IMG/VR virus record: IMGVR_UViG_3300043409_000928 | Coordinates: 124,001 to 188,000 of that record | Direction: 5' to 3' (one strand) | Length of the DNA stretch: 64,000 nucleotides | In this document: positions 3,556 through 48,938 of the stretch, one piece after another | Numbering within the stretch: position 1 is the stretch's first letter | How the letters are laid out: each line of letters opens with the position of its first letter | Program-made: the position numbers and the translations under genes | Notes under the pieces: generated by a model | What the model was told of the DNA's origin: nothing | The model's input: the letters and a program-made list of their open reading frames with translations, nothing else | Database searches by the model: none

Positions 3556-3561
3556 TAAATA
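3556..3561 (+). promoter_or_regulatory. Late promoter motif TAAATA, 5 nt before ATG 3567
   Basis: Core of the T4 late promoter TATAAATA at the head of the structural operon. Confidence 0.7.
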
Positions 3562-3566
3562 GGTGT

Positions 3567-4214
3567 ATGAAGATTACTGATCTAGCACCCCGTATCATTG
3601 CCGTATATGCTGGCCGCTTTCACCCATTTCACCATGGACATGCGGAAGTTTTTCGCGAACTTGCAAGTAAGTTTGGCATTAACAATACTTACATCACCAC
3701 TAGCGGCAAGGTAGACCCGAATAAGAGTCCGTTTTCATTTGATGAAAAGAAAATAATGATGCAGGCCGCTGGCGTACCAGCAGGCAATGTTGTTGAAGAA
3801 ATTGTTCCGTATGCGCCAGTTAATCTTCCACAAAAATTGACAGCAGATCCCAATAGAGATATCATGGTATTTGGTGTAGGGCAAAAGGACATGGCCGAAG
3901 ATCCTAGATTTGCATTTACCCCACTAAAAGATGGAACAGCCAGTTTCTTTCAAAAGTACACAGGTAAAAACATGATGCCGTTCAGCAATAAGAAAAATGA
4001 TGATGGTACCCGAGCCGGCCACGGATATGTAATACCTGTGGCCGATGTTGAATTCAGCATTGCTGGTAAAAAGATAAACAGCGCAAGTCAAATTAGAGAG
4101 TTGTATAAGTCTGCTGATGTGGAGCAACGATTGCAAATTTTAAATGAGCTATACCCCAACGGTGGCGCAAAAGTTAATAGTATCAAACGTATCTTTGATG
4201 CTAAACTAGGATAA
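3567..4214 (+). CDS. HIGH-motif nucleotidyltransferase (cytidylyltransferase-like)
   Basis: YAGRFHPFHHGH and SASQIR motifs. Confidence 0.75.
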   Translation: MKITDLAPRIIAVYAGRFHPFHHGHAEVFRELASKFGINNTYITTSGKVDPNKSPFSFDEKKIMMQAAGVPAGNVVEEIVPYAPVNLPQKLTADPNRDIMVFGVGQKDMAEDPRFAFTPLKDGTASFFQKYTGKNMMPFSNKKNDDGTRAGHGYVIPVADVEFSIAGKKINSASQIRELYKSADVEQRLQILNELYPNGGAKVNSIKRIFDAKLG

Positions 4215-4218
4215 CGCC

Positions 4219-4851
4219 GTGGCAAAATTAGGCTCTCAAGTTACACTTGAATTCAAAGCATTTGCAGATATGGGCACAAGAGATGCCAGTGGTCGAATGA
4301 CTGGTGAAAACGACGAACGATCACCCACTTACAAAAAAAATGAAAAGCACATTCTGACATGGCCAAGTACACCTAAGATTGCACAGTCAATTGAAGTTAA
4401 TTACAGTACTTGGGAATTACAACATACCAACTACCAGCCAAGCGCATTTGGTAATCGTTCAACACCTATTGTTACCATCAGTGGGCAGTGGTTCAGCCGA
4501 GACATAGCCGAGGCAACAGCAACATTACAGGCTATTCATTTACTGCGCTCAGCAACAAGTATGTTCTATGGTCGCGAAGATCCTAAGAAAGGAACTCCTC
4601 CCCCAATTGGAAGATTAAATGCTCACGGACTGTATAATAACACCCCGGTGGTGATAAAAACATTTCAATATGATTTTCCAAACGATGTTGATTATATCAC
4701 AGTACCTATGTTTAGTAGTAACCAAAGTGTTCCTGTGCTATTTGAAATGAGTATAAGCTTGATTGTGCAAATTAACAGTATTGATACTGTTAAAAATTAT
4801 ACACTTGAAAAATTTGTTAAAGGTGATTTACTTGGCGAAGGGTACATTTAA
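4219..4851 (+). CDS. Putative baseplate/tail-tube initiator protein
   Basis: GTG start; position directly before gp53; beta-rich sequence. Confidence 0.45.
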   Translation: MAKLGSQVTLEFKAFADMGTRDASGRMTGENDERSPTYKKNEKHILTWPSTPKIAQSIEVNYSTWELQHTNYQPSAFGNRSTPIVTISGQWFSRDIAEATATLQAIHLLRSATSMFYGREDPKKGTPPPIGRLNAHGLYNNTPVVIKTFQYDFPNDVDYITVPMFSSNQSVPVLFEMSISLIVQINSIDTVKNYTLEKFVKGDLLGEGYI

Positions 4852-4857
4852 AATATT

Positions 4858-5157
4858 ATGGCAACCACAGGATTAAACCAATACTCGGATACCCGCATTA
4901 CAGATTTTTATTTAAATCTTGCAAAATTGCCAACAGCCGATGATTTGCTTGCTGGCAAGACTGCACAATTTATAACAGTTGAGCCTAGGTTTCAACACAG
5001 ATTAGATTTACTAAGTCACTCCATATACGGTACCAGCGCATACTGGTGGGTAATTGCATTGTTAAACAGAAACCAGTTACAAGATCCCATTAGAGATTTG
5101 AAAACAGGCATGGTACTAAGAGTATTGTCATCGAGTGATATCAAAGGGGCTATTTAA
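4858..5157 (+). CDS. 53: Baseplate wedge protein gp53-like (LysM-like)
   Basis: RLDLLSHSIYGTSAYWWVIALLN...G.VLRV. Confidence 0.75.
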   Translation: MATTGLNQYSDTRITDFYLNLAKLPTADDLLAGKTAQFITVEPRFQHRLDLLSHSIYGTSAYWWVIALLNRNQLQDPIRDLKTGMVLRVLSSSDIKGAI

Positions 5158-9677: not shown

Positions 9678-9705
9678 CGATAAAACCCAGCTTTATTGAT
9701 ATTGG

Positions 9706-9711
9706 TAAATA
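9706..9711 (+). promoter_or_regulatory. Late promoter motif TAAATA, 5 nt before ATG 9717
   Basis: ggTAAATAggcttATG. Confidence 0.65.
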
Positions 9712-9716
9712 GGCTT

Positions 9717-10097
9717 ATGCCAATATTCACATCAAAATTTAGGGGTTATAGCTCAGTTGGGACTAGTTTTCTTAGTCCAACTCGATATGACATGGACCTA
9801 GCAAAACAAGACTTAATGAATCATTTTAACACTCGTAAGGGCGAGCGTGTGATGATGCCTGAGTTTGGTAGTATAATTTGGGATCTGTTATTTGAACCGT
9901 TGGATGATCAAACTAAAAAATTAATTGATGAAGATGTTCGTCAAGTTATCAAAAATGACCCACGCTGGCAACTAATTTCAGTAACAATATCTGAAGCACC
10001 CAATGCACTTAACCTTGAAGTTATAATGACATATTTGCCAGCAGATGAGACAGTACAATTACCCCTGATCTATAACAAAGGAACTAATACAGTATGA
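9717..10097 (+). CDS. 25: Baseplate wedge gp25-like
   Basis: TRKGERVMMPEFGS..WDLLFEP; start moved to ATG 9717. Confidence 0.9.
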   Translation: MPIFTSKFRGYSSVGTSFLSPTRYDMDLAKQDLMNHFNTRKGERVMMPEFGSIIWDLLFEPLDDQTKKLIDEDVRQVIKNDPRWQLISVTISEAPNALNLEVIMTYLPADETVQLPLIYNKGTNTV

Positions 10098-13281: not shown

Positions 13282-16200
13282 ATGGCTAAGAATCCTAAAA
13301 AATTAAATCCAATTGATCCATTGATTAAAACATGGCCAGGCCAATCGTTAAACACGGGAGTTGTTCCTGCCACAACTGATCTACTTCCTGGCATTTTTAG
13401 AACTGACACCAATAAGAAAGTTATTAGTGCAATCATGGAAGACTTATTTCAACCTGCGTCTTTAGAAACACTAAACTTTTTAGTTGGAAGAAATACATCC
13501 AGAAGCAAAGACAATAACTTTTTACCACATCCAACTGCCCGTCGCCAATTAGAAGCTGGTCTTGTTGTATTCACCAATGATGGTGTTGAGACTTTAAGTG
13601 CTGACGATGTTGCTAGAGGTTGGGAATTTAACAACAGAGAAAATGAATTACCTGTTCCATTGGGAGTATTAAATTTACCTATTGATCCAGATAAATTTGT
13701 GAACTGGTCTGATTATTATTGGATTGAAGAAGGCATGCCTTCTGTTAACGTAACAGGCGGCACCCAAGAACAATACTACGACATCAGTAGAGACATTGTT
13801 GGCAGCAGATATTATACACTTCCTATACAGCGCAACGGCCGCGCACTAGAATTAAAAAATGGCATGCGTTTGATTTTCCAACAGCATCCATTCCAAACAG
13901 GTATTGCCGCAGACGAACGCATTGCCTATGTTTCAACTGGTGCAATGGCTGACTCATTGCATTTTGAATTACTAGGATACGATAAACAACTTATTAGCAT
14001 TAGTGTCACTACTGACAGTATTGACGAAGTTACAAACTTACCAATCAGGAAAACCATCCAGCAAGTACAAGGCACGGACTATAGTATCTATGGCAATGAA
14101 ATACAATGGATTGTTAGACCAACAGTAGGCGACAATATCCATGTATTTCTATTAGATTACTATCTGACCAGAGATGACTACAAGCAAATGCGTGTCTGGC
14201 AAGTAGAAGGCGTTGGATCAGAAAAAGGTATTCGATTATTAGGCCGCTCTCACCAAATAACAAATACTGTTTATAGTAAAATAACACAAGGCCTTTGGGA
14301 TCAAACTGCAATACCATGGGACCGCATTGAATGGGATGGCAACATCTTGGGTATCAATGCAAAACATTATGTACTACAAAAAGTAGGTGCAGAAAATAGA
14401 AACGCACACAGCCGAGTTAATGTATGGTATCACAAGGATACCATACAGACTTTAGCAACCTTCTTAGACATCCCGTTTAATGACATTGCTAAGCCATCCA
14501 GCAAGGGTCTTCGCCCAATCTTGGAATTTGATCACAGACTGGAATTATGGAATCATGGAAAGACATATCGTCCATGGGTCAACAGTGTTGAGTCTAGTAA
14601 GTCGTCTCCAAACACGTATGTGGGAATGCCTTTAAAAGAATTTAGCATTGAACAAAAGATTGCAAATGAAGATACACTTGACTATCAATTGAATACCGCT
14701 CCACGAATCTTATGGTTAACAACAAATAGTACTGTTGTTAACAAAATTATCAATTTTATTTCAGAAGACGGTGTTATTACTGGCTATTTTGTCGAGACTG
14801 CAAATGCAGATGATGCAGTGGTTGTGGCTAATCCTTTTTATGTCAGCGGCCTTTCGTACACTGAATACTATTGGTTACCAACTGGCGAAGCAAGATTGGC
14901 CAACTACAGAAAAACTAGAACCACTCATCCTCTGTTTGAATTATACAGTAGAGATGGTATAAAATTAAGTGATCCTGCCAGCACTACTACAGGAACTCGA
15001 CCAGGAGTTGTTAACAGTACAATTATACAATTAGCATCAAATGGAGATACAGTAGATAACGAATCAGGTTATAAATTGAAATTTTTAACTAGTCAATTCA
15101 ATCAACTAAGCGAAGGCAACATTGCTAAAAATGCAATGTATGATATCTCATATGAATTTACTCAACAGGTTTATGCTGTATATTTTGAAGCGGGTGCGGC
15201 CAAGACCGTGCCAGGCCCGTATTCGTATAGAATTATACAAGGTAAGCCGCTTGAATACGAACTTAGTAACGGTTGGAAAAGGGCATGGTTTAGATTAAAG
15301 TCATGGGCAATTCGACGCATTGATATAACAGGCGATACTGTTATCCCACTTGATACCACAATGTGGCCAACATATAACTGGGGAATTTCTCCAATTGCCG
15401 GAGAAGCAAAATTTATTCATCTGGACGACTTTAAACCGGTGGTTGAAAATTGTGCAGTTGTTGCTCGCGGCGAGTTGGCCATATTTGATATGTACTTCCC
15501 GCTGGTCTCGTCTGTAATTGTTAACTTTGGCTCGGCTGAAATTGAACTCGATGTAGTCAACGGCAAACTCGAATTTGTAGTGCCATCAACAGCTAGCGAT
15601 ATATGTACAATCAGCTGGCTCAATAATAAATTAACTTTCAGAGTAATTGAAACCTATCAAGATCCGAGAAATGTAAAAGTCAAATTGAACGGCCTTCCAG
15701 CAGAGTATGAGTTTAATGTAGTAAGAGCAGGCACTGACATATTATCTGTGTCGCTGGTTATGACCGGCACAGGCACAATAGATATAATGCATCAGGGCAA
15801 CAGAGTAGAAACTGATATTTTAACAGCCATTCCAGGATTTGATCTTAATGCAGACCAGCTGACGGGTTTTGGCAATGTTGCATTGTCTACTTCTTCACTT
15901 TCTGTTGGTCGACTAGTTGGTGGGCTACAAGCAGAAATTGAAGCAACCAAAAGAAAAGGTCAGTCATGGATTGATTGTATGGCAGTTGGAGCAATGAGTG
16001 GCATATTGATGGCACAACACAGTTCTATCCGTGCCGCCTGGGCTACTTTTAAATTAAACCCGTCGTTGGACAAATTACTAATTGCAAGATCAATGGCATC
16101 ATGGCGCTGGTATCGTCGATTTATCAACAAGCTAGAAGAAAGTTTAACAATTTTAGATTTAGACAACACAACTACTGCATCTGCGCTAGATAGGATACTA

Positions 16201-21909: not shown

Positions 21910-21915
21910 TAAATA
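21910..21915 (+). promoter_or_regulatory. Late promoter motif TAAATA, 5 nt before ATG 21921
   Basis: cTAAATAtgcttATG. Confidence 0.65.
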
Positions 21916-21920
21916 TGCTT

Positions 21921-22547
21921 ATGAACAAGATTCAATTACCAGTCAGTATCGAAACATTTATTGTCATCAAAGATGCCGATACCGGAGAAATATTGCGTGA
22001 AGGCTCCAATGCCATTCACCAGGAAAACATGAGCACCGCCATTGCAACGGGACTGTCCCGTGGTAATAATCACTTTATCAGTGAAATACACTTTGGCATT
22101 GGTGCAAGTATTACAGGCATTGACGGAGTAATTACATACCGCAAGCCCAATGTAACTGGCATTGACGCCAACTTACACAAAGCAACATATTTTAGGGTAG
22201 TCGACGACGAAGACCTAAACAATCCAGACGCAGAAGCAAACAATGTGACTGTGACACATACAACAGGCACAACCTATGCAGATACTATTGTGACCGCAAC
22301 AATTGATTATAGTGATCCGTTGGTAAACGACAGCACATATAACATTGTTAACGGTACACAACAAAGCTTAGATGCCACAACCAGTGTTGACGGTGAGGTT
22401 GTGTTTGATGAAATTGGATTAAAAACCAAAGGGACAACTGGGGTCAATACAGGTAATTTGCTCACGCATTTTATATTCCACCCAGTTGAAAAGCAAATTA
22501 ATCAGCGTATACAAATTATATACACACTGAGAGTGCAGACCGGTTAA
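21921..22547 (+). CDS. Putative virion structural protein
   Basis: Structural operon context; FDEIGL...LLTHFIFHPVEK..N..I.I.YTLR C-terminus; start reassigned to 21921. Confidence 0.55.
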   Translation: MNKIQLPVSIETFIVIKDADTGEILREGSNAIHQENMSTAIATGLSRGNNHFISEIHFGIGASITGIDGVITYRKPNVTGIDANLHKATYFRVVDDEDLNNPDAEANNVTVTHTTGTTYADTIVTATIDYSDPLVNDSTYNIVNGTQQSLDATTSVDGEVVFDEIGLKTKGTTGVNTGNLLTHFIFHPVEKQINQRIQIIYTLRVQTG

Positions 22548-22560: not shown

Positions 22561-22566
22561 TAAATA
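22561..22566 (+). promoter_or_regulatory. Late promoter motif TAAATA upstream of fibre gene
   Basis: Intergenic TAAATA followed by a 33-nt leader. Confidence 0.5.
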
Positions 22567-22599
22567 TACAAAGGCAATAAGCCAAAAGGACATGAGAAA

Positions 22600-23667
22600 A
22601 TGGCATACGAAGTAAACAAAAGCAACGGTGATATATTAGTTAACTTGATTGATGGTGAAGTTGACAATACTACTACGCCCTTAAATTTACTAGGTAAAAA
22701 CTACCTGGGATATGGCGAACTAATCGCTGAAAACTTTGTTCACATGCTTGAAAATTTTTCAAGCAGTTCAGAGCCTGTGAGCCCTATTACCGGTCAGCTA
22801 TGGTTCAACACCGGTGAGAACAGATTGGCAGTACAAGATACTGATGAACATTGGAAAACGCTGGCCCATTTGGTGAGTCGTCAGAATAGACCAACTGATA
22901 CTGCTCGCTTAGGCGACTTTTGGTGGGATACAACAAACAAAGCATTGAAGATTTATGTTGGAACAACAAGTGCAGATCAAGTACTTCCGGGCTACAATTC
23001 TGGTTGGGTAAATGCCAGTGCGTTCCAAGGCAACAGCGGTATCAGCTTTGCAGACTTACTAGATACAAACGGAACCACACACAGGGTAGTTCGTTTTAAT
23101 GTAAATGGAATCTGCGTTGTAATTCTTAGCACTGATGCAGAGTTCACAATTGCACAGTCACATGCTGTTAATGGATTTCTTAGAATTGGTAAAGGTATTA
23201 ACATGAATACCACAGGCAACGACACACAGGCATTTAATCCAAATGCGTTTAAGTTGCGCGGTATTAGTATGGAAGCTGAATTTGCTGACGTGGCTGAAAT
23301 TTATGTTGGCGATGCTACATATGAGCCAGGTACATTGGTAAGCTTGGGTGGAGTAGCAGAAGTAACACAAACAGTTGGTGTAGCAGATCAAAATATCTTT
23401 GGTATTGTTTCTACTAGACCAGCTTACTTGATGAATGCACGACAAAAGCACGAAATAAATGCAATGCCAATTGCTGTTGCAGGACGAATCCCAGTCAAGG
23501 TCACTGGCATCGTAAACAAAGGCGACAGATTAGTTGCAAGCGATATCCCTGGAGTAGCACAATCTGCCACAGTTGATGTTCCAGCCTGGAGCATTATTGG
23601 TCGTAGCTTACAAAATTTCAGCGGAGAAGGCGTCGGTAAAGTCGAAGCTACAGTTGGAGTTAGGTAA
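22600..23667 (+). CDS. Tail fibre/baseplate appendage protein with C-terminal chaperone-like domain
   Basis: N-terminal LLGKNYLGYGE..AENF..MLENF; C-terminal ADVAEIY...YEPGTLV...GRIPVKV.G...GD.LV. Confidence 0.6.
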   Translation: MAYEVNKSNGDILVNLIDGEVDNTTTPLNLLGKNYLGYGELIAENFVHMLENFSSSSEPVSPITGQLWFNTGENRLAVQDTDEHWKTLAHLVSRQNRPTDTARLGDFWWDTTNKALKIYVGTTSADQVLPGYNSGWVNASAFQGNSGISFADLLDTNGTTHRVVRFNVNGICVVILSTDAEFTIAQSHAVNGFLRIGKGINMNTTGNDTQAFNPNAFKLRGISMEAEFADVAEIYVGDATYEPGTLVSLGGVAEVTQTVGVADQNIFGIVSTRPAYLMNARQKHEINAMPIAVAGRIPVKVTGIVNKGDRLVASDIPGVAQSATVDVPAWSIIGRSLQNFSGEGVGKVEATVGVR

Positions 23668-30346: not shown

Positions 30347-31314
30347 AAACCCCTATTACAGAATTTGATGTAGTATTCATCAGCTATGATGAACCAAATG
30401 CTGATGAGAACTATGCAGACCTATTAGAAAAATGCCCTTGGGCCAAGCGCAGTCATGGTGTGTATGGTAGCGATGCTTGCCATAAGGCAGCGGCCAAGCT
30501 GGCAGAAACAGAACGCTTTATCACAATTGATGCAGATAACAAAGTGCGAGCAGACTTCTTTGAAATGGAACTGGATTTGACCAAGTTTGATCGCAGTGAT
30601 GTACTAAGCTGGTCAGGCAAGAACGTGGTCAATGGTTTAGTTTATGGCAATGGCGGTGTTAAGCTGTGGCCCAAGAAAGTTGTTGAACAGATGCGTACAC
30701 ACGAAGCAGTTGATTCAGGCGCTGGCGCTGTGGATTTTTGTTGGGATATACATTACCATCAGTTAAACAACATCTATTCAGATGTGTACAACAATGCAAC
30801 ACCATATCAAGCATATCGTGCAGGTTTTAGAGAAGGTGTTAAACTAGCATTACATGATGGTCGTCCAATGGACTGGCGTCAAATTGCAGATAGAAATAAT
30901 TTTAAAAATCATCGTAGACTACTGGTCTGGATGAGTGTTGGCGACGATATTGACAACGGTTTGTGGGCCATGTATGGTGCCCGCTTGGGTTGTTATCTAA
31001 CCAACTTGCGAAAAGATTGGGACTACAGGCTAGTAGCCGATTTTGAATGGCACAATGCATACTGGCAAGAAGATGTTATGCCGCAGTTTGCTGGTGACGA
31101 AATTGTATGTCCAAAGTCAAAATATGCTTGGAGTAAAACAAAATTAATGGCCGAAACAATTAAGTTGGGTAAAGCATTGCATCAAGACCTGCGCCTAGAC
31201 ATTGCCACGTTAGATGCCGCTGGCAGTAAATTCTTCAAGGCAAGTTATTTCAATCCTCATCGCCTTGGCCCAACTGTCAAGGAAAGCGATGTTGAACAAT
31301 TTATTGCGGAGTAA
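30343..31314 (+). CDS. GT-A/GT2-like glycosyltransferase, paralogue 1
   Basis: DVVFISYDEPNAD...HKAAA...ITIDADN; YGNGG; GFREG. Confidence 0.65.
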   Translation: MKTPITEFDVVFISYDEPNADENYADLLEKCPWAKRSHGVYGSDACHKAAAKLAETERFITIDADNKVRADFFEMELDLTKFDRSDVLSWSGKNVVNGLVYGNGGVKLWPKKVVEQMRTHEAVDSGAGAVDFCWDIHYHQLNNIYSDVYNNATPYQAYRAGFREGVKLALHDGRPMDWRQIADRNNFKNHRRLLVWMSVGDDIDNGLWAMYGARLGCYLTNLRKDWDYRLVADFEWHNAYWQEDVMPQFAGDEIVCPKSKYAWSKTKLMAETIKLGKALHQDLRLDIATLDAAGSKFFKASYFNPHRLGPTVKESDVEQFIAE

Positions 31315-32190: not shown

Positions 32191-33157
32191 TATTAAAACG
32201 ACAACTGGTGATTCATCAATTGCTAATTCATCAATAGTCAATATTCCGGTAGTGTTTCTTAGCTTTGATGAGCCAAATGCCGACCTGCATTGGGAAAATT
32301 TACAGTCAATTGTACCACACAAGAAAATTGCCAGGGTACATGGGGTAGTGGGATTTGATACTGCACACAAAGCCGCCGCCGCAGAGTTTCCAACAAGCAA
32401 ATACATCATCACAGTTGACGCAGATAATATTGTTGATCCTAAATTTTTTAAATTGACTATTCCTGGAAAGGCAGATGGCCAAGTCAGTTACACCTGGGGC
32501 GGCAGACAATATACAAATGGCCTAATGTACGGAAACGGTGGTTTAAAAATGTGGAGCACAGAACATCTTGCCAACATGAAAAGCCATGAGCTGGCAGATG
32601 ACCAACGTGATGCTGTAGATTTTTGTTGGGACTTTGAACGCTACAAAGACTTACCAGGTTGCTATTCTAATGTATACACAAATGCCAGTGCTTACCAAGC
32701 ATTCCGTGTGGGCTTCCGCGAAGGTGTAAAGCTGTCAATGGAACAAGGTCGTGTGCTGGCATTTGACGAATGGATAACTACAATGCATGCCGCAAACTAC
32801 CAACGATTAATAACTTGGATGACAGTGGGTGCTGATGTTGAGCATGGCATGTGGAGTGTGTACGGAGCACGACTTGCAGTGAAATTTTTGCAATATGATG
32901 ATTTTGACTTTGTAAACATACGCGACTACGCATGGTTCAATGAGTTCTTCAAACAACATGGGACAGTTGATCCAGTTAAAGGTAGTAAAGTACTGGGCAA
33001 ACAAATTAGTGAGGGTCTGGGTTGGATACTACCTGATTTTGATAGTGAACAAAGTTCGTTTATTAAACAAATACAATTGCATCCAGCCAAAGCACTCACA
33101 CACGAAGATGTTGTATGGCGTACCAATTTAAGTTTATATGGATGGTTCCGTGGATAG
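32177..33157 (+). CDS. GT-A/GT2-like glycosyltransferase, paralogue 3
   Basis: VVFLSFDEPNAD...HKAAA...ITVDADN; YGNGG; GFREG. Confidence 0.65.
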   Translation: MSMFNIKTTTGDSSIANSSIVNIPVVFLSFDEPNADLHWENLQSIVPHKKIARVHGVVGFDTAHKAAAAEFPTSKYIITVDADNIVDPKFFKLTIPGKADGQVSYTWGGRQYTNGLMYGNGGLKMWSTEHLANMKSHELADDQRDAVDFCWDFERYKDLPGCYSNVYTNASAYQAFRVGFREGVKLSMEQGRVLAFDEWITTMHAANYQRLITWMTVGADVEHGMWSVYGARLAVKFLQYDDFDFVNIRDYAWFNEFFKQHGTVDPVKGSKVLGKQISEGLGWILPDFDSEQSSFIKQIQLHPAKALTHEDVVWRTNLSLYGWFRG

Positions 33158-34841: not shown

Positions 34842-34847
34842 TACATA
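34842..34847 (+). promoter_or_regulatory. Late promoter variant TACATA, 5 nt before ATG 34853
   Basis: One mismatch, same N5-ATG spacing. Confidence 0.35.
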
Positions 34848-34852
34848 TAGAC

Positions 34853-35470
34853 ATGCACCTGTCTGTAATAAGTACCCACTCTGACAACTTTACAAAACAC
34901 GAAGAAAAGTATGACCAATTTTTACAGTTGGTCGAAAGCAGTGACAGTCCAGCGGCAATCAATATGGGCCATGTGCCACCGGCTGGATTGGTATATCTTT
35001 TAAAAGGCAAGCATCGTTGGAATAAGGGCTCTGGCGAAGTTGCACTATTGCACAACGATACTACAAACAGTATAGTAGGTGTCAGTGCAGTAGAGCATAG
35101 CACCTTGTTACCCAAACTTGGATCAGGCGGCAATCGCTGTTGGCTATTGCCCGAGTACCGAAAACACAATGAAGTAACTAGATTTCTTTTAAAGAGGAAT
35201 CTAGAATGGTGTGTAGAACAAGATAAAAAAGGAATGTTGTTGAGTTTTAACAACTATAATAAACTATTATACGATGCAGTGGTTAAAATTAACAAAGGCA
35301 AGGCCGCGGCAATTGGAACTGTATGGAGCAATTGGTGGAAGGATTGTATTCCATTGCCAAGGCAAATTATGTTGTTCAATACCCCACAATGGGCAGTACT
35401 CAAACCACTGGACAATGAAGACGAAATGTTTAAGTTGGTTGAACAATTGGATAGTATCCATGGAATTTAA
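34853..35470 (+). CDS. GNAT-like acyltransferase
   Basis: IVGVSAV...RCWLLPEYRK resembles GNAT motif A. Confidence 0.4.
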   Translation: MHLSVISTHSDNFTKHEEKYDQFLQLVESSDSPAAINMGHVPPAGLVYLLKGKHRWNKGSGEVALLHNDTTNSIVGVSAVEHSTLLPKLGSGGNRCWLLPEYRKHNEVTRFLLKRNLEWCVEQDKKGMLLSFNNYNKLLYDAVVKINKGKAAAIGTVWSNWWKDCIPLPRQIMLFNTPQWAVLKPLDNEDEMFKLVEQLDSIHGI

Positions 35471-40333: not shown

Positions 40334-40858
40334 TTAACCAATAGAAATATCTGGTGAAAACCGAACACTAAGCATGAGTCTTCTTTTGTCACTGTGATTA
40401 ATAACCTGGTGAGGAACATCTATTTTAACAATTGTGGGCTTATCAACAATGATTGATTGTTGTATTTGTTTTTCTTCGTCCCAGTTAAGTTCTAAATATT
40501 TTAGGCCTTGCGTATTTGCAGTTTCGCTTAGATGAAATTTACCAGAGTACCAAATCATCTCACCAGCATCACAATTGGCAATTGGAATATTCAATGCACA
40601 GTTACTTGCACCCCTACGGTCGACATCATAGCCATCAACATGTATTGCTTGTGTGCTAGTTGGACCTTGCCCAAATACTATTGCACTTTTGAGTTTTAAC
40701 GTACTTCCCAGTGTTGATTCTAATATGTCTGCTAACCAAATGTTATCTTCCTGAGTACAAATATAGCTCTGTTGTGTAGCAACATCGGGCATAAGCCCTT
40801 GGAAACGCTCAACAATGGCTGTACAATTGGCCAGCTCAATGTGTTTATATAATTGCAT
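40334..40858 (-). CDS. 2OG-Fe(II) dioxygenase-like protein
   Basis: IHVDG...ALNIPI...PHQVIN...RLMLSVRF. Confidence 0.65.
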   Translation of the reverse strand: MQLYKHIELANCTAIVERFQGLMPDVATQQSYICTQEDNIWLADILESTLGSTLKLKSAIVFGQGPTSTQAIHVDGYDVDRRGASNCALNIPIANCDAGEMIWYSGKFHLSETANTQGLKYLELNWDEEKQIQQSIIVDKPTIVKIDVPHQVINHSDKRRLMLSVRFSPDISIG

Positions 40859-40862
40859 ATTC

Positions 40863-40904
40863 TATTTATCTTGGCGTAAACAACAAATCTATTATCTATA
40901 AATA
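40863..40904. promoter_or_regulatory. Back-to-back late promoter motifs (TAAATA minus 40863-40868; TATAAATA plus 40897-40904)
   Basis: Each lies 4-5 nt before a divergent ATG. Confidence 0.7.
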
Positions 40905-40909
40905 GCAGT

Positions 40910-41362
40910 ATGGAATACATTATAACTTTTTTGGTCTGGACTCTCTACTTGTATGTGATTCATCGCGTAATACATGGGGTAGGATTAAAGTTCTTTCCTG
41001 TTGCGTTCAAGGCACACGCTGATCACCACAAATATATTAATACCCACGAGCAAACCAAATGGCACTGGAACAACTTGTTCTTGTTCAACGATACTTGGAC
41101 AAGTACATTGGATCTTTGGATTACAGAAGTCATTCCAACTTTGGTTTTTAGTTGGATAACAGGTTACTGGTGGATCAGCGTATTTTATTATCTATGGGCG
41201 GCACTGGTGCAAGAAACAATTGAACACAATCCAAAATTCAACGTCTATCCGTACCTTACAAGTGGAAAGTGGCACCTAATTCACCATCGAGATACCACTG
41301 CTAATTATGGATTGTTTATTCCGCTGTGGGATAAACTATTTGGCACACTTACTCGTGCCTAG
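40910..41362 (+). CDS. Fatty acid hydroxylase/sterol desaturase family membrane protein
   Basis: HRVIH, HADHH, HLIHH...NYG....WDKLFGT. Confidence 0.85.
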   Translation: MEYIITFLVWTLYLYVIHRVIHGVGLKFFPVAFKAHADHHKYINTHEQTKWHWNNLFLFNDTWTSTLDLWITEVIPTLVFSWITGYWWISVFYYLWAALVQETIEHNPKFNVYPYLTSGKWHLIHHRDTTANYGLFIPLWDKLFGTLTRA

Positions 41363-43405: not shown

Positions 43406-44284
43406 TTAGGCGCTAACAATTCTTATTTTCCTACGATCCTTTTCACTTCTACACTGATTCATTGTGCAGGCAAATGGTTGTGTAGGTGGACACCATGCAG
43501 GATCAAACGCATTGAAGTGCTCGTTTCTGCCACCACATTGACTGTATGATACAAATCCTTTGGGGTTTATATATAACCAATCAACCCCTGCATAGCAAGG
43601 CATTCCTGTATACACAGGATCTGTGTCATTGACTATTCGTAAATCAATGTACCTAGGATCTGGCAAGTTTAGATCAACAATAACGGGCTCTGATATATAA
43701 TCATCAGGTCTGCCAAAAATTCTGTTTTCATCAATTGTACTGTATCCGCTGTACAGCTCGCCATTTTCGTTATACAATATTTGTTCACAGCAGTGGTACC
43801 CTAAGTTTTTAAAGTACTCTACTTTTTGTCTAAACTCAAAAACACGACCCGGAACTAACGGAACTTCAATTGATACTTCTATGTTTTTTTCTTGACATTG
43901 CTCCAATATAAATCCAACCACATCATCGTTTTGCCATTCGTGGTAAGTGAGTTTAAGTCTATCAATTAAATTTAACACCCCGTACAGTGCAAAATACGTA
44001 TCATCACCACTGGTATCTAATCTTATAATACAAGGCTGTTCTCTCATTTTTTTTAGCAATGTACTCAGGTCAGGGAAGTTCAGTGGTTCACCGCCACCTA
44101 TCTTCCAAAGTATTTTAGAGTGATGTTGTAGTCTTGTATTTTGTAATTTTTCAATGACAGAGAGATACTGGTCAACGGGCCTGTCTAAATTTCCAGTTCT
44201 AAATTGTGGCTGGCAATAAGAACATTGTAGTTTGCAATGAGCATTTAAAAGCCAAGTTACCTCTGCATGGTCTAGTTCTATCAT
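43406..44284 (-). CDS. Radical SAM enzyme with Cys-rich (twitch/SPASM-like) C-terminus
   Basis: CKLQCSYC; GGGEP; PCYAG...QCG...C....AC..NQC. Confidence 0.85.
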   Translation of the reverse strand: MIELDHAEVTWLLNAHCKLQCSYCQPQFRTGNLDRPVDQYLSVIEKLQNTRLQHHSKILWKIGGGEPLNFPDLSTLLKKMREQPCIIRLDTSGDDTYFALYGVLNLIDRLKLTYHEWQNDDVVGFILEQCQEKNIEVSIEVPLVPGRVFEFRQKVEYFKNLGYHCCEQILYNENGELYSGYSTIDENRIFGRPDDYISEPVIVDLNLPDPRYIDLRIVNDTDPVYTGMPCYAGVDWLYINPKGFVSYSQCGGRNEHFNAFDPAWCPPTQPFACTMNQCRSEKDRRKIRIVSA

Positions 44285-44289
44285 GTGTA

Positions 44290-44295
44290 TATTTA
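44290..44295 (-). promoter_or_regulatory. Late promoter motif TAAATA, 5 nt before the radical SAM ATG
   Basis: tTAAATAtacacATG. Confidence 0.65.
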
Positions 44296-44347: not shown

Positions 44348-45556
44348 TTAATGCTTGGGTGGCACGTAATTGGCAGTGATACCAAACGGTGCAGTGATAT
44401 CTTTGCTACCATGCACAACAAACAGCGTGTCGCAGTAGTCTGGGTCTCCCCATGAACCGAACGGGTAGCCGTCTGTAAAGAATACCAATTGGTGCGGCTG
44501 AACTTCGTTGTCTTTCATCCATTGCCATACACAAGCAAAGTCTGTACCGCCCCCACCTTTAATACTGTATTCAGCCATGCTTCGACCATCGTCGCCGGTA
44601 AACGTGTCTTCGTTGTAAACGTCTGTGTCAAAGGTAACTACCTGCACCTTGTAACTTGTAAACTGATCCAAGCTACCTTGTACCATACCTAAGAAGTCAC
44701 GCAACATGCCTTCATCAATGGAACCGGATGCATCTAGTGCCACTACAATGTCAAGTTCCTCACCAGGTAACTGTCCTGGAAGTACTGCACCGGTGTGCCA
44801 GCCCTTGCGGTTGGGACGCATCCAAGTGTAATCGCTTTTTACTGATCCACTAAACTGAATACGCAACAGATCTTTAAGATCCATTACAGGTGCAGTAATA
44901 TCTTTAACCAGTCTTTCAATATCCATTGGGACATTGCCAGCGCCTGCATTTTTCGTTGCCTGTATAACTGCTTCACGCCATTCATCGCGCAAGGCTTTCT
45001 GTTCTTCTTCGCTTAACTTCTTAAACTTTGGCCTGCCCTTGCCAGGAATAGGATTGCCATTGGCATCAGTTTCGCCATCGCCTTCTTCGCCATCGCCTTC
45101 CATGTCTAAGTGATCATCTAGCGTCATTTGGATTTTGACAGCGTTTTTCATTAAGTCATCATATACTTCGTCGGCAGTCTTGCCTTCATACTTACGATCT
45201 TCTAAGATTGGGACGGCAGTAATGCGAGTTCCAACGCTTTCACGGATCAGCATGTTGTTGATAACATAGTCACCTGCCATGTTCCAAATCTGTGGTTCCC
45301 GACTACCACGGCGTGTCATGTGATCAAAAATAATGTGTCCAAGCTCGTGTCCAAATCCAAAAATTAACTCGCCATCTGACAGCTTCTGGACAAACTCTTT
45401 ATTGTAGTAGAACTTGCGGCCGTCTGTTGCAATAGTTTTGCACCATTCTACTTCTTCTAATTTTAGGCGAGCGGCCAACGGTCCCCAAAATGGATACTTT
45501 AAGAGCATGGCAACACGGCTCTTAATTAAACGATCTCTTGCAGGCATTTTAGACAT
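44348..45556 (-). CDS. Putative metallopeptidase (HExxH) plus VWA domain protein, DUF2201-like
   Basis: TIATDG; HELGH; VALDASGS MIDAS; GGGTDF; FTDG. Confidence 0.85.
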   Translation of the reverse strand: MSKMPARDRLIKSRVAMLLKYPFWGPLAARLKLEEVEWCKTIATDGRKFYYNKEFVQKLSDGELIFGFGHELGHIIFDHMTRRGSREPQIWNMAGDYVINNMLIRESVGTRITAVPILEDRKYEGKTADEVYDDLMKNAVKIQMTLDDHLDMEGDGEEGDGETDANGNPIPGKGRPKFKKLSEEEQKALRDEWREAVIQATKNAGAGNVPMDIERLVKDITAPVMDLKDLLRIQFSGSVKSDYTWMRPNRKGWHTGAVLPGQLPGEELDIVVALDASGSIDEGMLRDFLGMVQGSLDQFTSYKVQVVTFDTDVYNEDTFTGDDGRSMAEYSIKGGGGTDFACVWQWMKDNEVQPHQLVFFTDGYPFGSWGDPDYCDTLFVVHGSKDITAPFGITANYVPPKH

Positions 45557-45584
45557 ATAATGGCTCCATTTACTTTATGTATAT

Positions 45585-45613
45585 ATTATACTGTTATTTA
45601 GGCTTTTGGTCAA
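45585..45613 (-). promoter_or_regulatory. sigma70 promoter
   Basis: TTGACC-17nt-TATAAT preceded by AAAAAATCAGG. Confidence 0.75.
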
Positions 45614-45938
45614 CCTGATTTTTTATCAAATCTGGACCTGACAAGTCCCAAATCATAGCCACTTGTGGATCCCTGAACCAAATAGATTGCTTTGGTATAA
45701 AATCCCAATCCAGTCGCTTCAATCCTTGTTCTCTGGCCCATTTGGTAACTTCATTAATTGTGGCATTGGTTGGGTAAGATCGGACGGACCAGCTCTTCCT
45801 TTGTTCGCGGAGCCACTCGCTAACATCAGATGGGGCAGGGGGCTGATCCGCCCAAACTTGGCGGGCTTCTGAGCCATACATTATTTCAAGTACGGCCCAG
45901 TTCCGTTGTCTCTTACTCGTCTGTGAGTAAGTTGGCAT
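45594..45938 (-). CDS. Hypothetical protein
   Basis: ORF between MoxR and VWA; true start uncertain (possibly 45881). Confidence 0.45.
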   Translation of the reverse strand: MPTYSQTSKRQRNWAVLEIMYGSEARQVWADQPPAPSDVSEWLREQRKSWSVRSYPTNATINEVTKWAREQGLKRLDWDFIPKQSIWFRDPQVAMIWDLSGPDLIKNQVDQKPK

Positions 45939-47013
45939 AGCGTTTGAAGAAGTCAGGGAAGTTAGTCATCTTCTTACGATCAAACACCACCTTGTAAGAC
46001 TTCAATACAGTATGGGCACCCATGATAACCATTTCTGGTTCAAAGTTCGCCATCATAAAGCCCAGCCAGTTGTCTGCACTCTTGTTGAACTCGTCTAACT
46101 TGCCAGACCGCTTGCCTGCTTCGTAACGTGTACGAAGTTCGTAGCTCAGGCTGGTGACCATTGCATAAGCGGCACTTACCTCTTTGCTCTTAAAAGTGGT
46201 AACTTTACCTGACAGCACATCTTCTGGAGCAGGCAAGTCCGCGGCATGTTTACGATGGCTCATAAACTTAATTGCCATTCCTTCACCAACCAAGCCAGAT
46301 ACCATATCTGTGTTGGCACTGGCCGGCATGTCGTCGTCCAGCATCTCGCTGACAAAACTCCAGGTGCGAGGAGTAGCAAAGGCACGGTCGTGTTGCGTAG
46401 GATCAAAGTTGTATAGGTCGCCTTTGAACTGCTTCAAGAAGCCAACCACGTGCGGATGGACTTCGTGCATGATGGCCCATTGTTCCCAGTCTTCAAAGTC
46501 CACTCGGATTTCCAAGTGCATGAAACGGTTGGCTAGTGGGCTAGGCATACGATAGGTAACACCCTTATCGCCCATTCGGTTACCTGCGGCAATTAGAACC
46601 ACATTGTCGGGCAATTTGTATTGTCCAACCTTGCGGTTAAGGATAAGTTGGTAAGCCGCGGCTTGTACAGCAGGAGGAGCACTGTTAAGCTCATCTAAGA
46701 ACAAGAACACAATGTCGTATTCTTTTGCAAATTCCTCAGTAGGCAATTCTGAAGGGGTAGCCCACTTCATAGTATTGTCACCTGCACTATAATAAGGGAC
46801 ACCCTTAATATCTGTAGGATCCATTAGGGCCATACGCAAGTCCACGACTGCGGAGTTGGGCCATTCTGCGGCAACTTGGTTCACCATATCCGACTTGCCT
46901 ACTCCGGGAGGTCCCCAGACAAAGACAGGTCGGCGTTTTGCAACGGCTCGGCGTAGAATTGGTTTGCACTCGCTAATTTTTACGGTGCGGGTTTCGACTG
47001 TATTAGATCCCAT
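45913..47013 (-). CDS. MoxR-family AAA+ ATPase
   Basis: GPPGVGKS Walker A; LFLDELN Walker B; AAGN; LANRF. Confidence 0.9.
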   Translation of the reverse strand: MGSNTVETRTVKISECKPILRRAVAKRRPVFVWGPPGVGKSDMVNQVAAEWPNSAVVDLRMALMDPTDIKGVPYYSAGDNTMKWATPSELPTEEFAKEYDIVFLFLDELNSAPPAVQAAAYQLILNRKVGQYKLPDNVVLIAAGNRMGDKGVTYRMPSPLANRFMHLEIRVDFEDWEQWAIMHEVHPHVVGFLKQFKGDLYNFDPTQHDRAFATPRTWSFVSEMLDDDMPASANTDMVSGLVGEGMAIKFMSHRKHAADLPAPEDVLSGKVTTFKSKEVSAAYAMVTSLSYELRTRYEAGKRSGKLDEFNKSADNWLGFMMANFEPEMVIMGAHTVLKSYKVVFDRKKMTNFPDFFKRYANLLTDE

Positions 47014-47051
47014 TTGGTGGCTCCAGCTTAGGGTTTGTTGAACATGTATTT

Positions 47052-47080
47052 ATTATAGCAAACACAGGGGTTGTTGTCAA
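47052..47080 (-). promoter_or_regulatory. Perfect consensus sigma70 promoter
   Basis: TTGACA-17nt-TATAAT. Confidence 0.9.
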
Positions 47081-47684: not shown

Positions 47685-47713
47685 ATTATATGGCAACTAG
47701 AGCCAAGAGTCAA
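47685..47713 (-). promoter_or_regulatory. sigma70 promoter for the ArfA-like gene
   Basis: TTGACT-17nt-TATAAT preceded by AAAAAACAGG; 9 nt to ATG. Confidence 0.8.
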
Positions 47714-47756
47714 CCTGTTTTTTGACTATTTTTGTTGTATTTTTACAACAAACTGC

Positions 47757-48191
47757 CTAATTCTGACGAAATTTTAGGTTTTTTACTTGCCTTAGCACCC
47801 GGCTCATAAACTTAAAGTTAGCACTCACTAACTCCAATAGTTCATCGGCAGGATTGGTACTGGTGCTGGCCATACCAAATGCTATCTCACCTACATCAGA
47901 AAAGTATTGTAAGGTGGGCCAGCGTCTTTGCTTTATTTCCCATGCATCAATAAACAAACATTCTTCACCAATACCACGCATAATTGGTTGCCGCTGTCTT
48001 CCTGGCAAGTTCTGTGCCGACAGCATTTTAATTGCAATCGGCTGTTCCCATAGGTCAGTGCGTTCAAATGTTCTGGCCACAGTATGTACCAAGAAGGCTT
48101 CTACATCAGGCTCCAAATAAGTCTGACTGACACCTTGGGCTTCAACTACCAACTCCCACCCAGCTTTTACATATGGTTGCCAATTCTGCAT
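47757..48191 (-). CDS. Hypothetical protein
   Basis: Start reassigned to MQNWQ, preceded by TAAATA-N5 (48197-48202). Confidence 0.55.
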   Translation of the reverse strand: MQNWQPYVKAGWELVVEAQGVSQTYLEPDVEAFLVHTVARTFERTDLWEQPIAIKMLSAQNLPGRQRQPIMRGIGEECLFIDAWEIKQRRWPTLQYFSDVGEIAFGMASTSTNPADELLELVSANFKFMSRVLRQVKNLKFRQN

Positions 48192-48226
48192 AGAAATATT
48201 TATGCAGTATTTGGAAGTTACCGGAG

Positions 48227-48610
48227 TTAACCTTTTCCCTGCGCTCGTCTGCTTAGTCCGTCCAGCCAAAGAATGATGTCATCATTTACCAAACGAATTT
48301 CCATAGCATCATTTTCACCAAATATACGAAAGTAGCCGGCGCCGTGGTAGTAAGGCCAATCCAGGTGTTTCTCTAAACCTATTAGATGACCAGGTTTTGG
48401 ACTCCAGCCAACAGGACACTGATAAGACCAATACCTAAAATGAGGTCGCATCAGTTCCCAACCAAATGCAGTTAAACGAAGTCCTTTTTGTTTTTTTGGT
48501 TGGTAATTTTTAAACACCGTGTAAGGCGTTATCTTAGTGCTTTCCCAAATGTGTGGGATAGGATATTGAGCAAGATACTCAGTTATCCTTGTAGCTATTT
48601 CCTGCTTCAT
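48227..48610 (-). CDS. Hypothetical protein
   Basis: 127-aa aromatic-rich ORF. Confidence 0.5.
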   Translation of the reverse strand: MKQEIATRITEYLAQYPIPHIWESTKITPYTVFKNYQPKKQKGLRLTAFGWELMRPHFRYWSYQCPVGWSPKPGHLIGLEKHLDWPYYHGAGYFRIFGENDAMEIRLVNDDIILWLDGLSRRAQGKG

Positions 48611-48890
48611 TGATACGCCGCCCTTGCTTTAATTCTACCACACTAAAGTCTTCAGCTTTAAATAAATTATTCAAACGATCAGCTAGATTAAAAGCATGTC
48701 CAGGATTAGAAAAGCTGACTTTTTTGTATTTAGGACCTGGATAGCTTACCAGGCTGTTTAGTGTACGAAGATTAATAGGCTTATCTTTGTAGAATACAGC
48801 ATAGATAGCGTCAGCCGCCAGCACTTCCTCGCTTTTGTAAGTGCGAGGGTTTGTATTGGTAAGGAGGATAGTTGGCTTGGGTCTGGACAT
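48579..48890 (-). CDS. Hypothetical phage protein
   Basis: Start MSRPKP preceded by TAAATA-N5 (48896-48901). Confidence 0.6.
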   Translation of the reverse strand: MSRPKPTILLTNTNPRTYKSEEVLAADAIYAVFYKDKPINLRTLNSLVSYPGPKYKKVSFSNPGHAFNLADRLNNLFKAEDFSVVELKQGRRINEAGNSYKDN

Positions 48891-48938
48891 GCAGTTATTT
48901 ATCAAAACAGCATATTTAATGACTGGATAAACTACCGC

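What the first reader, a model, noticed from the sequence alone, without database searches (positions are those of the whole stretch)
3556..48901. TAAATA-N5-ATG: late promoters predicting leaderless mRNAs
Seen: TAAATA lies exactly 5 nt before an ATG, mostly without a Shine-Dalgarno, at 3556, 9706, 21910, 40899 (plus) and 44295, 48202, 48901 (minus); N4 variants at 40868 and 63409; TACATA-N5 at 34842. The rule also picks better starts than the ORF track (9717, 21921, 48191, 48890). Established: T4 late transcription starts about 5-6 nt downstream of TATAAATA. Inference: +1 falls on the A of ATG, so many late genes are translated as leaderless mRNAs, possibly to bypass or outcompete host SD-led initiation.
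Basis: partly seen in the sequence, partly recalled or inferred. Interest (0 to 1): 0.65.

Follow-up and report, generated by a model that had tools for sequence, protein, structure and literature searches.

The report
Late promoters fused to start codons
In this uncultured 285-kb T4-related jumbo phage and over a hundred of its environmental relatives, about 30 genes per genome (several of them virion genes) have a T4-type late promoter box exactly five bases before an ATG and no ribosome-binding site, so they are most likely expressed as leaderless late mRNAs. T4 itself and the named cultured relatives tested do not show this layout.

Summary
TAAATA-N5-ATG occurs 7 times in the window (1.75 expected). 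Across the whole 285-kb phage record the box is TAA[A/G]TA, and its distance to ATG peaks sharply at N5: 31 sites against about 5 at other spacings, 23 of them opening ORFs of 60 aa or more.

- The 31 genes with a box 4-6 nt before the ATG have no Shine-Dalgarno (0/31, against 63% of other genes).
- The enrichment is for ATG only, and 24/31 have a pyrimidine at -1.
- No chosen gene start lies 8-14 nt from a box.
- Box, spacing and ATG are conserved at orthologous genes in the related IMG/VR loci (up to 80 per gene) while the flanks diverge.
- One orthologue set switches between N5-ATG and box-GGAG-ATG.

The window encodes a gp55-type late sigma factor. T4's box spans -13 to -6, so N5 puts +1 on the A of ATG. 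T4 and Atu_ph07 have leaders of about 15-28 nt; RaK2 and XaC1 show no N5 excess.

No transcription start data could be obtained, so "leaderless" remains an inference. The idea that it outcompetes host SD-led initiation has no support, because most phage genes keep an SD. I rate it a new variant of a known kind.

The parts
2493..3479 (-). gp55-type late sigma factor (328 aa, with a roughly 170-aa N-terminal extension relative to T4 gp55)
   Evidence: phrog_12791 'sigma factor for late transcription' E=5e-90. phrog_234 'late sigma transcription factor' E=3.8e-24 over residues 177-290. T4 gp55 matches window 2709-2939(-) at E=1.6e-5.
3556..3569 (+). TAAATA-N5-ATG. It heads the baseplate gene block, and the ATG at 3567 starts a 215-aa cytidylyltransferase-like gene (3567-4214).
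   Evidence: Of 36 orthologous loci, 10 keep N5-ATG and 26 have the same box followed by GGAG and an ATG 17-19 nt downstream.
9706..9719 (+). TAAATA-N5-ATG. The ATG at 9717 starts the gp25-like baseplate wedge gene (9717-10097).
   Evidence: phrog_43 E=1e-18; PF04965 and an identical 126-aa gene call on public contigs. In 79 of 80 related loci the box lies 4-7 nt before the ATG, mostly at N5. No SD.
21910..21923 (+). TAAATA-N5-ATG. The ATG at 21921 starts a 208-aa gene (21921-22547) just after the 2868-aa virion protein gene.
   Evidence: The box is at N5 or N6 in all 25 orthologous loci. phrog_11259.
22561..22602 (+). Contrast case: TAAATA box with a predicted leader of about 28 nt carrying AAAGGA, then ATG 22600 (355-aa gene).
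   Evidence: Sequence. The same layout is conserved in 23 orthologous loci.
40856..40868 (-). TAAATA-N4-ATG. The ATG at 40858 starts a 174-aa gene (40334-40858). It is one half of a back-to-back promoter pair.
   Evidence: Most of the 20 orthologous loci have ATAAATA-N5-ATG here.
40899..40912 (+). TAAATA-N5-ATG. The ATG at 40910 starts a 150-aa fatty-acid-hydroxylase-like gene (40910-41362), divergent from the previous part across 51 nt.
   Evidence: Orthologues mostly carry ATAAGTA-N5-ATG.
44282..44295 (-). TAAATA-N5-ATG. The ATG at 44284 starts a 292-aa radical-SAM gene (43406-44284). A hairpin plus T-run terminator lies just upstream.
   Evidence: Box-N5-ATG is present in 16 of 17 orthologous loci.
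48189..48202 (-). TAAATA-N5-ATG. The ATG at 48191 starts a 144-aa gene (47757-48191).
   Evidence: The layout is conserved in 38 of 39 orthologous loci although the upstream sequences differ strongly.
48888..48901 (-). TAAATA-N5-ATG. The ATG at 48890 starts a 103-aa gene (48579-48890).
   Evidence: Of 55 orthologous loci, 42 have N5, 12 have N8 and 1 has the box 23 nt before the ATG.
63397..63409 (-). TAAATA-N4-ATG before a 125-aa gene (63022-63399). Ambiguous: the spacer is AGGA and a second in-frame ATG follows two codons later.
34842..34855 (+). TACATA-N5-ATG (gene 34853-35470). Not supported as a member of the class.
   Evidence: The sequence is present, but TACATA shows no N5 excess genome-wide. 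No relatives were examined here.

Best explanation
TAA[A/G]TA (extended G-R-TAARTA) is the -10-type box of this phage's late promoters. It is read by host RNA polymerase carrying the phage's gp55-type sigma factor, which is encoded at window 2493-3479.

At about 30 genes per genome the box sits exactly five bases before an ATG. With T4 geometry (box at -13 to -6), transcription then starts on the A of the start codon. The first cistron of that late transcript is therefore a leaderless mRNA. It would be translated without a Shine-Dalgarno by ribosomes that recognise a 5'-terminal AUG. Downstream cistrons of the same transcript, and other box-preceded genes, keep ordinary SD sites.

What is shown: the motif, its spacing statistics, the absence of SD, the ATG specificity, conservation in relatives, the sigma factor gene, and the contrast with T4 and Atu_ph07.

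What is inferred: that the box is a promoter, that +1 is the A of ATG, and the mode of translation.

A likely consequence, also inferred, is that these genes can be translated only from transcripts that start at their own late promoter. On read-through transcripts the ATG is internal and has no SD. That would tie translation to late timing, as T4 does by a different route for genes e, soc, 49 and I-TevI.
For: 1. Spacing. TAARTA-to-ATG is 31 at N5, against about 5 at other spacings and 9.4 +/- 3.0 in Markov genomes. In unique upstream variants from relatives the counts are N5:N4:N6 = 148:10:5.
2. No SD. 0/31 genes with a box 4-6 nt before the ATG reach -5 kcal/mol against the anti-SD, compared with 63% of other genes and 10% of random ATGs.
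3. ATG only. GTG and TTG show no N5 excess (4 and 0 sites), while SD-led genes use 17.5% GTG/TTG.
4. A pyrimidine at -1 in 24/31, against 46% in SD-led genes. From established knowledge, bacterial RNA polymerase prefers a pyrimidine at -1 and a purine at +1 at start sites.
5. Bimodal box-to-start distance: 31 genes at 4-6 nt, 1 at 7, 0 at 8-14, and from 15 nt upward mostly with an SD.
6. Conservation. At the orthologues of 9717, 21921, 44284, 48191, 48890 and the 40858/40910 pair, box, spacing and ATG are kept while the spacer and flanks vary.
7. Natural switch. The 3567 orthologues have either N5-ATG or box-N4/5-GGAGA-N6-9-ATG, so the box is separable from the ATG and behaves as a promoter.
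8. A gp55 homologue is encoded, and no -35 signal is seen.
9. T4 box numbering is -13 to -6 (PMC2988020).
10. The box is half as frequent as expected genome-wide, and 44% of copies lie in the 11.7% of the genome that is non-coding.
11. Functions found among these genes are portal, baseplate hub, gp25-like wedge and two virion structural proteins.
12. The N5 peak fits gp55 geometry (box ends at -6) rather than sigma70 geometry (hexamer ends at -7, which would give N6).
13. In the same window, sigma70-type promoters (TTGACA-N17-TATAAT) have leaders of about 35 nt with an SD.
Against: - Promoter activity and the exact +1 are therefore unproven.
- The gp55 homologue is distant from T4's (E=1.6e-5) and carries a long N-terminal extension, so start-site spacing could differ by a base or two.
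- The core is only six bases with one degenerate position. There are 257 copies in the genome and most cannot be promoters, so something else must add specificity.
- No gp45 homologue was found with the T4 protein (a weak negative). gp33 was not tested.
- Several genes with a box 4-6 nt before the ATG (three radical-SAM enzymes, a cytidylyltransferase-like and a hydroxylase-like protein) are not obviously late.
- The one host hint points to Betaproteobacteria. From general knowledge, leaderless mRNAs are rare and poorly translated in Proteobacteria.
- About 12 of 55 orthologues of 48890 have N8 rather than N5, which implies short leaders rather than none.
Confidence: 0.72

Rival explanations
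1. The box is a promoter and the mRNAs are leaderless, but the box is read by the host's primary sigma factor as a degenerate -10 element. This is how leaderless genes work in Deinococcus-Thermus, mycobacteria and Thermus phage phiYS40. Under this reading the gp55 homologue is not involved.
For: Host-sigma -10 elements directly before ORFs are the usual source of leaderless mRNAs (PMC12340547). phiYS40 middle/late mRNAs are leaderless (PMC3594737). Which sigma factor reads the box was not tested here.
Against: TAARTA ends in A where sigma70 -10 elements have their most conserved T. The spacing peak is N5, not the N6-N7 expected for a sigma70 hexamer. The same window has canonical TTGACA-N17-TATAAT promoters with long leaders at other genes. 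The box matches the T4-family late consensus, and a gp55 homologue is encoded.
Confidence: 0.1
2. TAARTA at -11 to -6 is not a promoter. It is an SD-independent translation signal inside polycistronic mRNAs, for example an A/U-rich ribosome or S1 landing site at a fixed distance from the AUG.
For: There is a fixed distance to the ATG and no SD. Many of the sites lie 3-80 nt after a co-oriented upstream gene with no obvious terminator.
Against: - The same box occurs 15-40 nt upstream of SD-led starts at conserved positions: 22561 before 22600, and the 3567 orthologues.
- Boxes sit after terminators, and back to back in a 51-nt divergent intergenic region where two promoters are required.
- The box equals the T4-family late promoter core.
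- The word is avoided on both strands genome-wide.
- The gp25-like gene of Atu_ph07 and SCTP-2 has the box at the same place but with a leader and an SD.
Confidence: 0.08
3. The box is a late promoter, but in this lineage transcription starts elsewhere. A start farther downstream would mean the conserved ATG is not the start codon used. A start from an upstream promoter would mean the mRNAs are not leaderless.
For: The gp55 homologue is divergent, and the start-site distance is unmeasured.
Against: - Orthologous proteins align from residue 1 at these ATGs, and independent gene calls agree.
- The first 30 nt after the ATG are unstructured, as at real starts (-1.1 against -3.8 kcal/mol for internal windows).
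- A sharp N5 peak, with a pyrimidine at -1 and an A at the start position, is hard to explain unless the ATG sits at or within 1-3 nt of +1.
- There is no alternative SD-ATG nearby.
Confidence: 0.07
4. It is a chance or compositional pattern, or a side effect of stop codons (the TAA of the box ending the upstream gene).
For: The genome is AT-rich, and the box contains TAA.
Against: 0 of 100 shuffles reach the window count. The genome count is 31 against 9.4 +/- 3.0 simulated. Only 1 of 31 boxes supplies the stop codon of an upstream gene. The layout is conserved at up to 80 related loci per gene.
Confidence: 0.02

Closest known systems
T4 late promoters (TATAAATA, gp55/gp33/gp45-dependent)
   Same: The box core TAAATA is the same and sits in the -11 to -6 register. 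There is no -35 element. A gp55-family sigma factor is encoded. The box lies before virion genes.
   Different: Positions -13/-12 are G/R rather than T/A, and -8 may be G. In T4 the box lies 23-29 nt before the ATG and the leaders carry an SD; no T4 TATAAATA-N5-ATG opens an ORF of 60 aa or more. Here about 30 promoters abut the ATG. No gp45 homologue was found with the T4 protein.
Predicted ATAAATA late promoters of Rak2-like jumbo phages (CBB, GAP32; PMC5259590)
   Same: They belong to the same wider phage group (baseplate wedge 29-35% identical). They have a gp55-like sigma, and an ATAAATA motif was found upstream of structural genes by MEME.
   Different: That paper does not mention a fixed spacing to the ATG or leaderless mRNAs. 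RaK2 and XaC1 show no N5 excess (5 and 2 sites against 17 and 11 for the reversed control). Atu_ph07 peaks at 20 and 31-33 nt.
Thermus phage phiYS40 middle/late leaderless mRNAs
   Same: It is a large myovirus in which most middle/late transcripts lack a leader. The same rationale of favouring phage translation has been proposed (PMC3594737).
   Different: From my own knowledge, the phiYS40 promoters are read by the host primary sigma factor, and Thermus is a host in which leaderless genes are common (PMC12340547). In phiYS40, IF2 goes up and IF3 goes down. Here the box is gp55-type, only some box-preceded genes have no leader, and the one host hint is betaproteobacterial.
T4 genes e, soc, 49 and I-TevI: translation only from late-promoter transcripts
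   Same: Translation competence is tied to the promoter that made the transcript (PMC3014915). The leaderless layout would have the same effect.
   Different: T4 does it with an RNA hairpin that hides the SD on longer transcripts. Here there is no SD at all, and the 5' end itself would be the signal.
Leaderless genes with a -10 element next to the ORF (Deinococcus-Thermus, mycobacteria, lambda cI)
   Same: A promoter box lies at a fixed short distance before the start codon, there is no SD, and the start is AUG-dominated (PMC12340547, PMC4633059).
   Different: Those use the host primary sigma factor with a TANNNT-type hexamer. Here it is a phage late-sigma box, restricted to one temporal class of a virus.

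Membership tests
T4-type (gp55-dependent) late promoter | A/T-rich box matching TATAAATA at -13 to -6 | tested here: inconclusive
   The six 3' positions match (TAAATA, or TAAGTA with G at -8). Positions -13/-12 are G (13/20) and A/G instead of T/A. T4-family phages are known to vary at -13/-12 (PMC2988020).
T4-type (gp55-dependent) late promoter | No conserved -35 element | tested here: met
   No position between -51 and -14 exceeds 0.4 bits in 20 N5 sites.
T4-type (gp55-dependent) late promoter | Phage encodes a gp55-family sigma factor | tested here: met
   Window 2493-3479(-): phrog_12791 5e-90, phrog_234 3.8e-24; T4 gp55 E=1.6e-5.
T4-type (gp55-dependent) late promoter | Sliding clamp gp45 and co-activator gp33 present | tested here: inconclusive
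   T4 gp45 as query found nothing, and the tool warns that a blank shows nothing. gp33 was not searched. The CBB paper also reports no gp33/gp45 homologues in a Rak2-like phage.
T4-type (gp55-dependent) late promoter | Drives late (virion) genes | tested here: met
   Portal, baseplate hub, gp25-like wedge and two virion structural proteins are among the genes with a box 4-6 nt before the ATG. Timing itself is untested.
T4-type (gp55-dependent) late promoter | Transcription starts 6 nt after the box and depends on gp55 | not testable with these tools
   No RNA data were available. This needs in vitro transcription or start-site mapping.
Leaderless mRNA | The 5' end of the primary transcript coincides with the start codon (leader of 0 to a few nt) | not testable with these tools
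   Inferred only, from T4 geometry and the N5 peak.
Leaderless mRNA | No Shine-Dalgarno upstream | tested here: met
   0/31 at or below -5 kcal/mol, mean -1.25, no stronger than random ATGs at -1.71.
Leaderless mRNA | AUG strongly preferred as start codon | tested here: met
   At N5: ATG 31, GTG 4, TTG 0. SD-led genes use 17.5% GTG/TTG.
Leaderless mRNA | Promoter -10 box at a fixed short distance before the start codon | tested here: met
   Sharp N5 peak in the genome and in relatives.
phiYS40-type programme (leaderless late mRNAs plus a shift in initiation factors) | Infection changes the IF2/IF3 balance to favour leaderless mRNAs | not testable with these tools
   Only gene content could be checked. 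The phage encodes IF1 but no IF3 C-terminal domain and no S21. No link to leaderless translation is shown.

The most novel reading that the evidence does not exclude
The leaderless layout is a promoter-coupled translational gate. About 30 genes, including the portal and baseplate proteins, can be translated only from transcripts that begin at their own gp55-type promoter, and are silent on early or read-through transcripts. The phage also tunes the host's initiation machinery late in infection to make 5'-terminal AUGs competitive in a proteobacterial host that normally translates them poorly. It carries its own IF1 and two initiator-like tRNAs with the C1xA72 mismatch.
Probability: 0.25. Interest if true: 0.75.

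Novelty: new variant of a known kind. Interest (0 to 1): 0.55.

Why it matters
- T4 late transcription is a textbook system, yet its promoters are described with leaders and SD sites. A whole environmental clade in which the same kind of box is fused to the start codon would show that gp55-type promoters can specify both the transcription start and the translation start with one 14-nt element.
- It gives a simple, checkable rule for annotating starts in these phages. The rule corrects at least four ORF-track starts in this window.
- It offers a natural test bed for leaderless translation in what is probably a proteobacterial host.
- The orthologue sets that switch between N5-ATG and box-GGAG-ATG are ready-made matched pairs for experiments.
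- If the gate idea holds, it is a second, simpler solution to the problem that T4 solves with RNA hairpins at genes e, soc, 49 and I-TevI.

Tried and rejected
- Megablast of 20 kb of the window against named phages found nothing. Relatives came from protein-level searches instead.
- Atu_ph07 first looked enriched at N5 (8 of 57 forward-strand hits). With the whole genome and an ORF filter this vanished: 2 ORF-opening sites at N5, with peaks at 20 and 31-33 nt.
- The TACATA variant at 34842 has no genome-wide support.
- Phage IF1: its TAAGTA-N6-GTG looked like a further case. In relatives the 'box' is just the coding end of the upstream gene and is not conserved, and the start is coupled to that gene's stop codon. 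Rejected.
- IF3_C and S21 searches were blank. T4 gp45 was blank.
- The stop-codon side-effect idea is rejected: 1 of 31 boxes supplies an upstream gene's stop codon.
- An upstream promoter element was sought and not found at the 20 N5 sites. A conserved ATAAA-N6/7-TTAT element upstream of 9706 and 21910 remains unexplained.
- The primary phiYS40 paper (PMC1885378) is not held, so that precedent rests on a review.
- The large protein searches, structure prediction and complex prediction were not needed and not used.
Full report
**What the window is.** The window is bases 124,001-188,000 of a 285,304-bp IMG/VR virus record (86% complete, 41.5% GC). Its baseplate wedge protein is 29-35% identical to those of the Rak2-like/Atu_ph07/SCTP-2 group of T4-superfamily jumbo phages. 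The plus-strand block from 3.5 to 38.6 kb holds baseplate and other virion genes. At least 140 related contig loci (52-98% protein identity) exist in IMG/VR.

**The observation.**
- All seven TAAATA-N5-ATG sites are present, against 1.75 expected; 0 of 100 shuffles reach 7.
- In the whole genome, the TAAATA-to-ATG distance is 16 at N5, 8 at N4 and 6 at N6, against about 3 at other spacings.
- A scan of one-base variants showed that TAAGTA behaves the same way (15 at N5), so the box is TAA[A/G]TA.
- Combined, N5 = 31 of 257 boxes, and 23 of these open ORFs of 60 aa or more. GTG, TTG and control triplets show nothing at N5.
- Second-order Markov genomes give 9.4 +/- 3.0 (maximum 19).
- The box is half as frequent as expected (134 observed against 222-274 expected for TAAATA), while TAAATT, TAAATG and TAAATC are not depleted.
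- 44% of boxes lie in the 11.7% of the genome that is non-coding.

**Are the ATGs real starts without an SD?** A simple gene model gave 31 genes with a box 4-6 nt before an ATG.
- None has an anti-SD duplex of -5 kcal/mol or better. The figures are 63% for other genes and 10% for random ATGs, although the genome clearly uses AAGGAG-type SDs.
- The base before the ATG is a pyrimidine in 24/31, against 46% in SD-led genes.
- The first 30 nt of these ORFs are unstructured, like true starts.
- Orthologous proteins align from residue 1 at 9717, 21921, 44284, 48191, 48890, 40858 and 40910.
- Public gene calls give the identical 126-aa product from 9717.
- Only 1 of 31 boxes doubles as the upstream gene's stop codon.

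**Is the box a promoter?** The evidence is indirect but consistent.
- The window encodes a gp55-type late sigma factor at 2493-3479.
- The box equals the last six bases of T4's TATAAATA, and no -35 signal exists.
- Rak2-like phages were already predicted to use ATAAATA before structural genes (PMC5259590).
- Boxes follow terminators.
- Two boxes lie back to back in the 51-nt divergent region at 40858/40910.
- Annotated genes with a box 4-6 nt before the ATG include the portal, baseplate hub, gp25-like wedge and two virion structural proteins.
- The box can be separated from the ATG. At 22561 it precedes a leader of about 28 nt with AAAGGA. Among 36 orthologues of 3567, 10 have N5-ATG and 26 have the box, then GGAG(A), then the ATG 17-19 nt from the box.
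- In the genome, box-to-start distances are 4-6 nt (31 genes) or 15 nt and more (mostly with an SD), with none at 8-14. Relatives give N5:N4:N6 = 148:10:5 unique variants.

**Geometry.** The T4 review places the box at -13 to -6 (PMC2988020). Five bases after the final A therefore comes +1, which is the A of ATG. A sigma70 hexamer ends at -7 and would predict N6, so the N5 peak fits gp55 geometry. In the SD-led orthologues the same rule puts +1 at or next to the GGAG, giving a minimal 12-14-nt leader.

**Comparison with relatives.**
- T4's TATAAATA lies 23-29 nt before ORF-opening ATGs. Atu_ph07's boxes peak at 20 and 31-33 nt.
- RaK2 and XaC1 show no N5 excess. SCTP-2 gave 24 sites against 19 for the reversed control, which is not a clear excess.
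- The gp25-like gene shows the history. Atu_ph07 has TATAAATA, a 33-nt leader, an SD and a GTG start. SCTP-2 has TAAATA-N16-ATG with an SD. This clade has the box at N5 with no SD. The leaderless state is therefore derived.
- Early/middle-type genes in the same window have canonical TTGACA-N17-TATAAT promoters with leaders of about 35 nt and GGAGCCACC.

**Interpretation.** The best reading (confidence 0.72) is that these are gp55-type late promoters fused to start codons, which give leaderless first cistrons. Because these ATGs have no SD, they should be silent on read-through transcripts. That ties translation to late-promoter use, the effect T4 obtains with RNA hairpins at e, soc, 49 and I-TevI (PMC3014915). 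This last step is inference.

**What is known.**
- Leaderless late phage mRNAs have a precedent in Thermus phage phiYS40 (PMC3594737).
- A -10 box next to the ORF is common in Deinococcus-Thermus (PMC12340547).
- phiKZ early transcripts include none that are leaderless (PMC8244752), and AR9 5' UTRs are 26-491 nt (PMC5312081).
- Full-text searches found no paper linking gp55-type promoters with leaderless mRNAs.
- I therefore rate this a new variant of a known kind.

**Limits.** The sigma factor is divergent. The six-base core is too short to define promoters alone. The timing of the non-structural genes with a box 4-6 nt before the ATG is unknown. Counts from the related loci are not independent events, because the loci are homologous.

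Noticed in passing
G000:260354-260575 (-), outside the window (L207:1489-1710): The phage encodes a full-length translation initiation factor IF-1 (TIGR00008 infA, 100 bits; PF01176, 77 bits) with a GTG start. Homologues at 67-82% identity occur on other large IMG/VR contigs. IF1 is absent from T4, Atu_ph07, RaK2, SCTP-2 and XaC1. Its apparent TAAGTA-N6-GTG is not conserved: it is the coding end of the upstream gene, and the start is coupled to that gene's stop codon.
   Followed up: partly
G000:43002-43400 (-), outside the window (L205): There is a permuted (two-piece) tmRNA gene with tag ANDSQFALAA. Rfam calls it beta_tmRNA (RF01850, 132 bits). This is the only hint to the host and points to Betaproteobacteria.
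   Followed up: partly
G000:16821-33681 (-), outside the window: There are 29 tRNA genes. Two tRNA-CAT genes (31062-31136 and 32465-32540) have the C1xA72 acceptor mismatch typical of bacterial initiator tRNA, but lack the three G:C pairs in the anticodon stem.
   Followed up: no
window 47011-47080 (-) and 45554-45613 (-): Canonical sigma70-type promoters (TTGACA/TTGACC-N17-TATAAT) are followed by a leader and an SD, then the ATG (GGAGCCACC before 47013, GGAGCCA before 45556). They lie before the ATPase (45913-47013) and the HNH-like gene (44348-45556). The GGAGCCACC leader motif is conserved in dozens of relatives.
   Followed up: partly
window 9678-9705 and 21889-21909 (+): A conserved intergenic element of the form ATAAA-N6/7-TTAT (ATAAAACCCAGCTTTAT before 9706, ATAAAGTGGGTTAT before 21910) lies 10-15 nt upstream of the two boxes. 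It is kept in relatives while neighbouring bases vary. It is not seen at other sites with a box 4-6 nt before the ATG, and its function is unknown.
   Followed up: no
window 13282-21888 (+): A 2868-aa ORF follows the baseplate wedge gene. The Atu_ph07 counterpart at the same position is annotated as a virion structural protein of about 4450 aa.
   Followed up: no
G000:2609-3709 (-), G000:22472-23617 (-), window 43406-44284 (-): Three different radical-SAM proteins are among the genes with a late-type box fused to the ATG. A cytidylyltransferase-like gene (3567) and a fatty-acid-hydroxylase-like gene (40910) are too. This is an enzyme set apparently co-expressed with virion genes.
   Followed up: no
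L028-L035 and similar loci, upstream of the 3567 orthologue; three loci at the 40910 orthologue: In the SD-led variants the sequence after the box reads ATG-GAG..., so an in-frame upstream ATG (N3 or N5) overlaps the GGAG. These orthologues might start leaderless four or five codons earlier rather than at the SD-led ATG.
   Followed up: no
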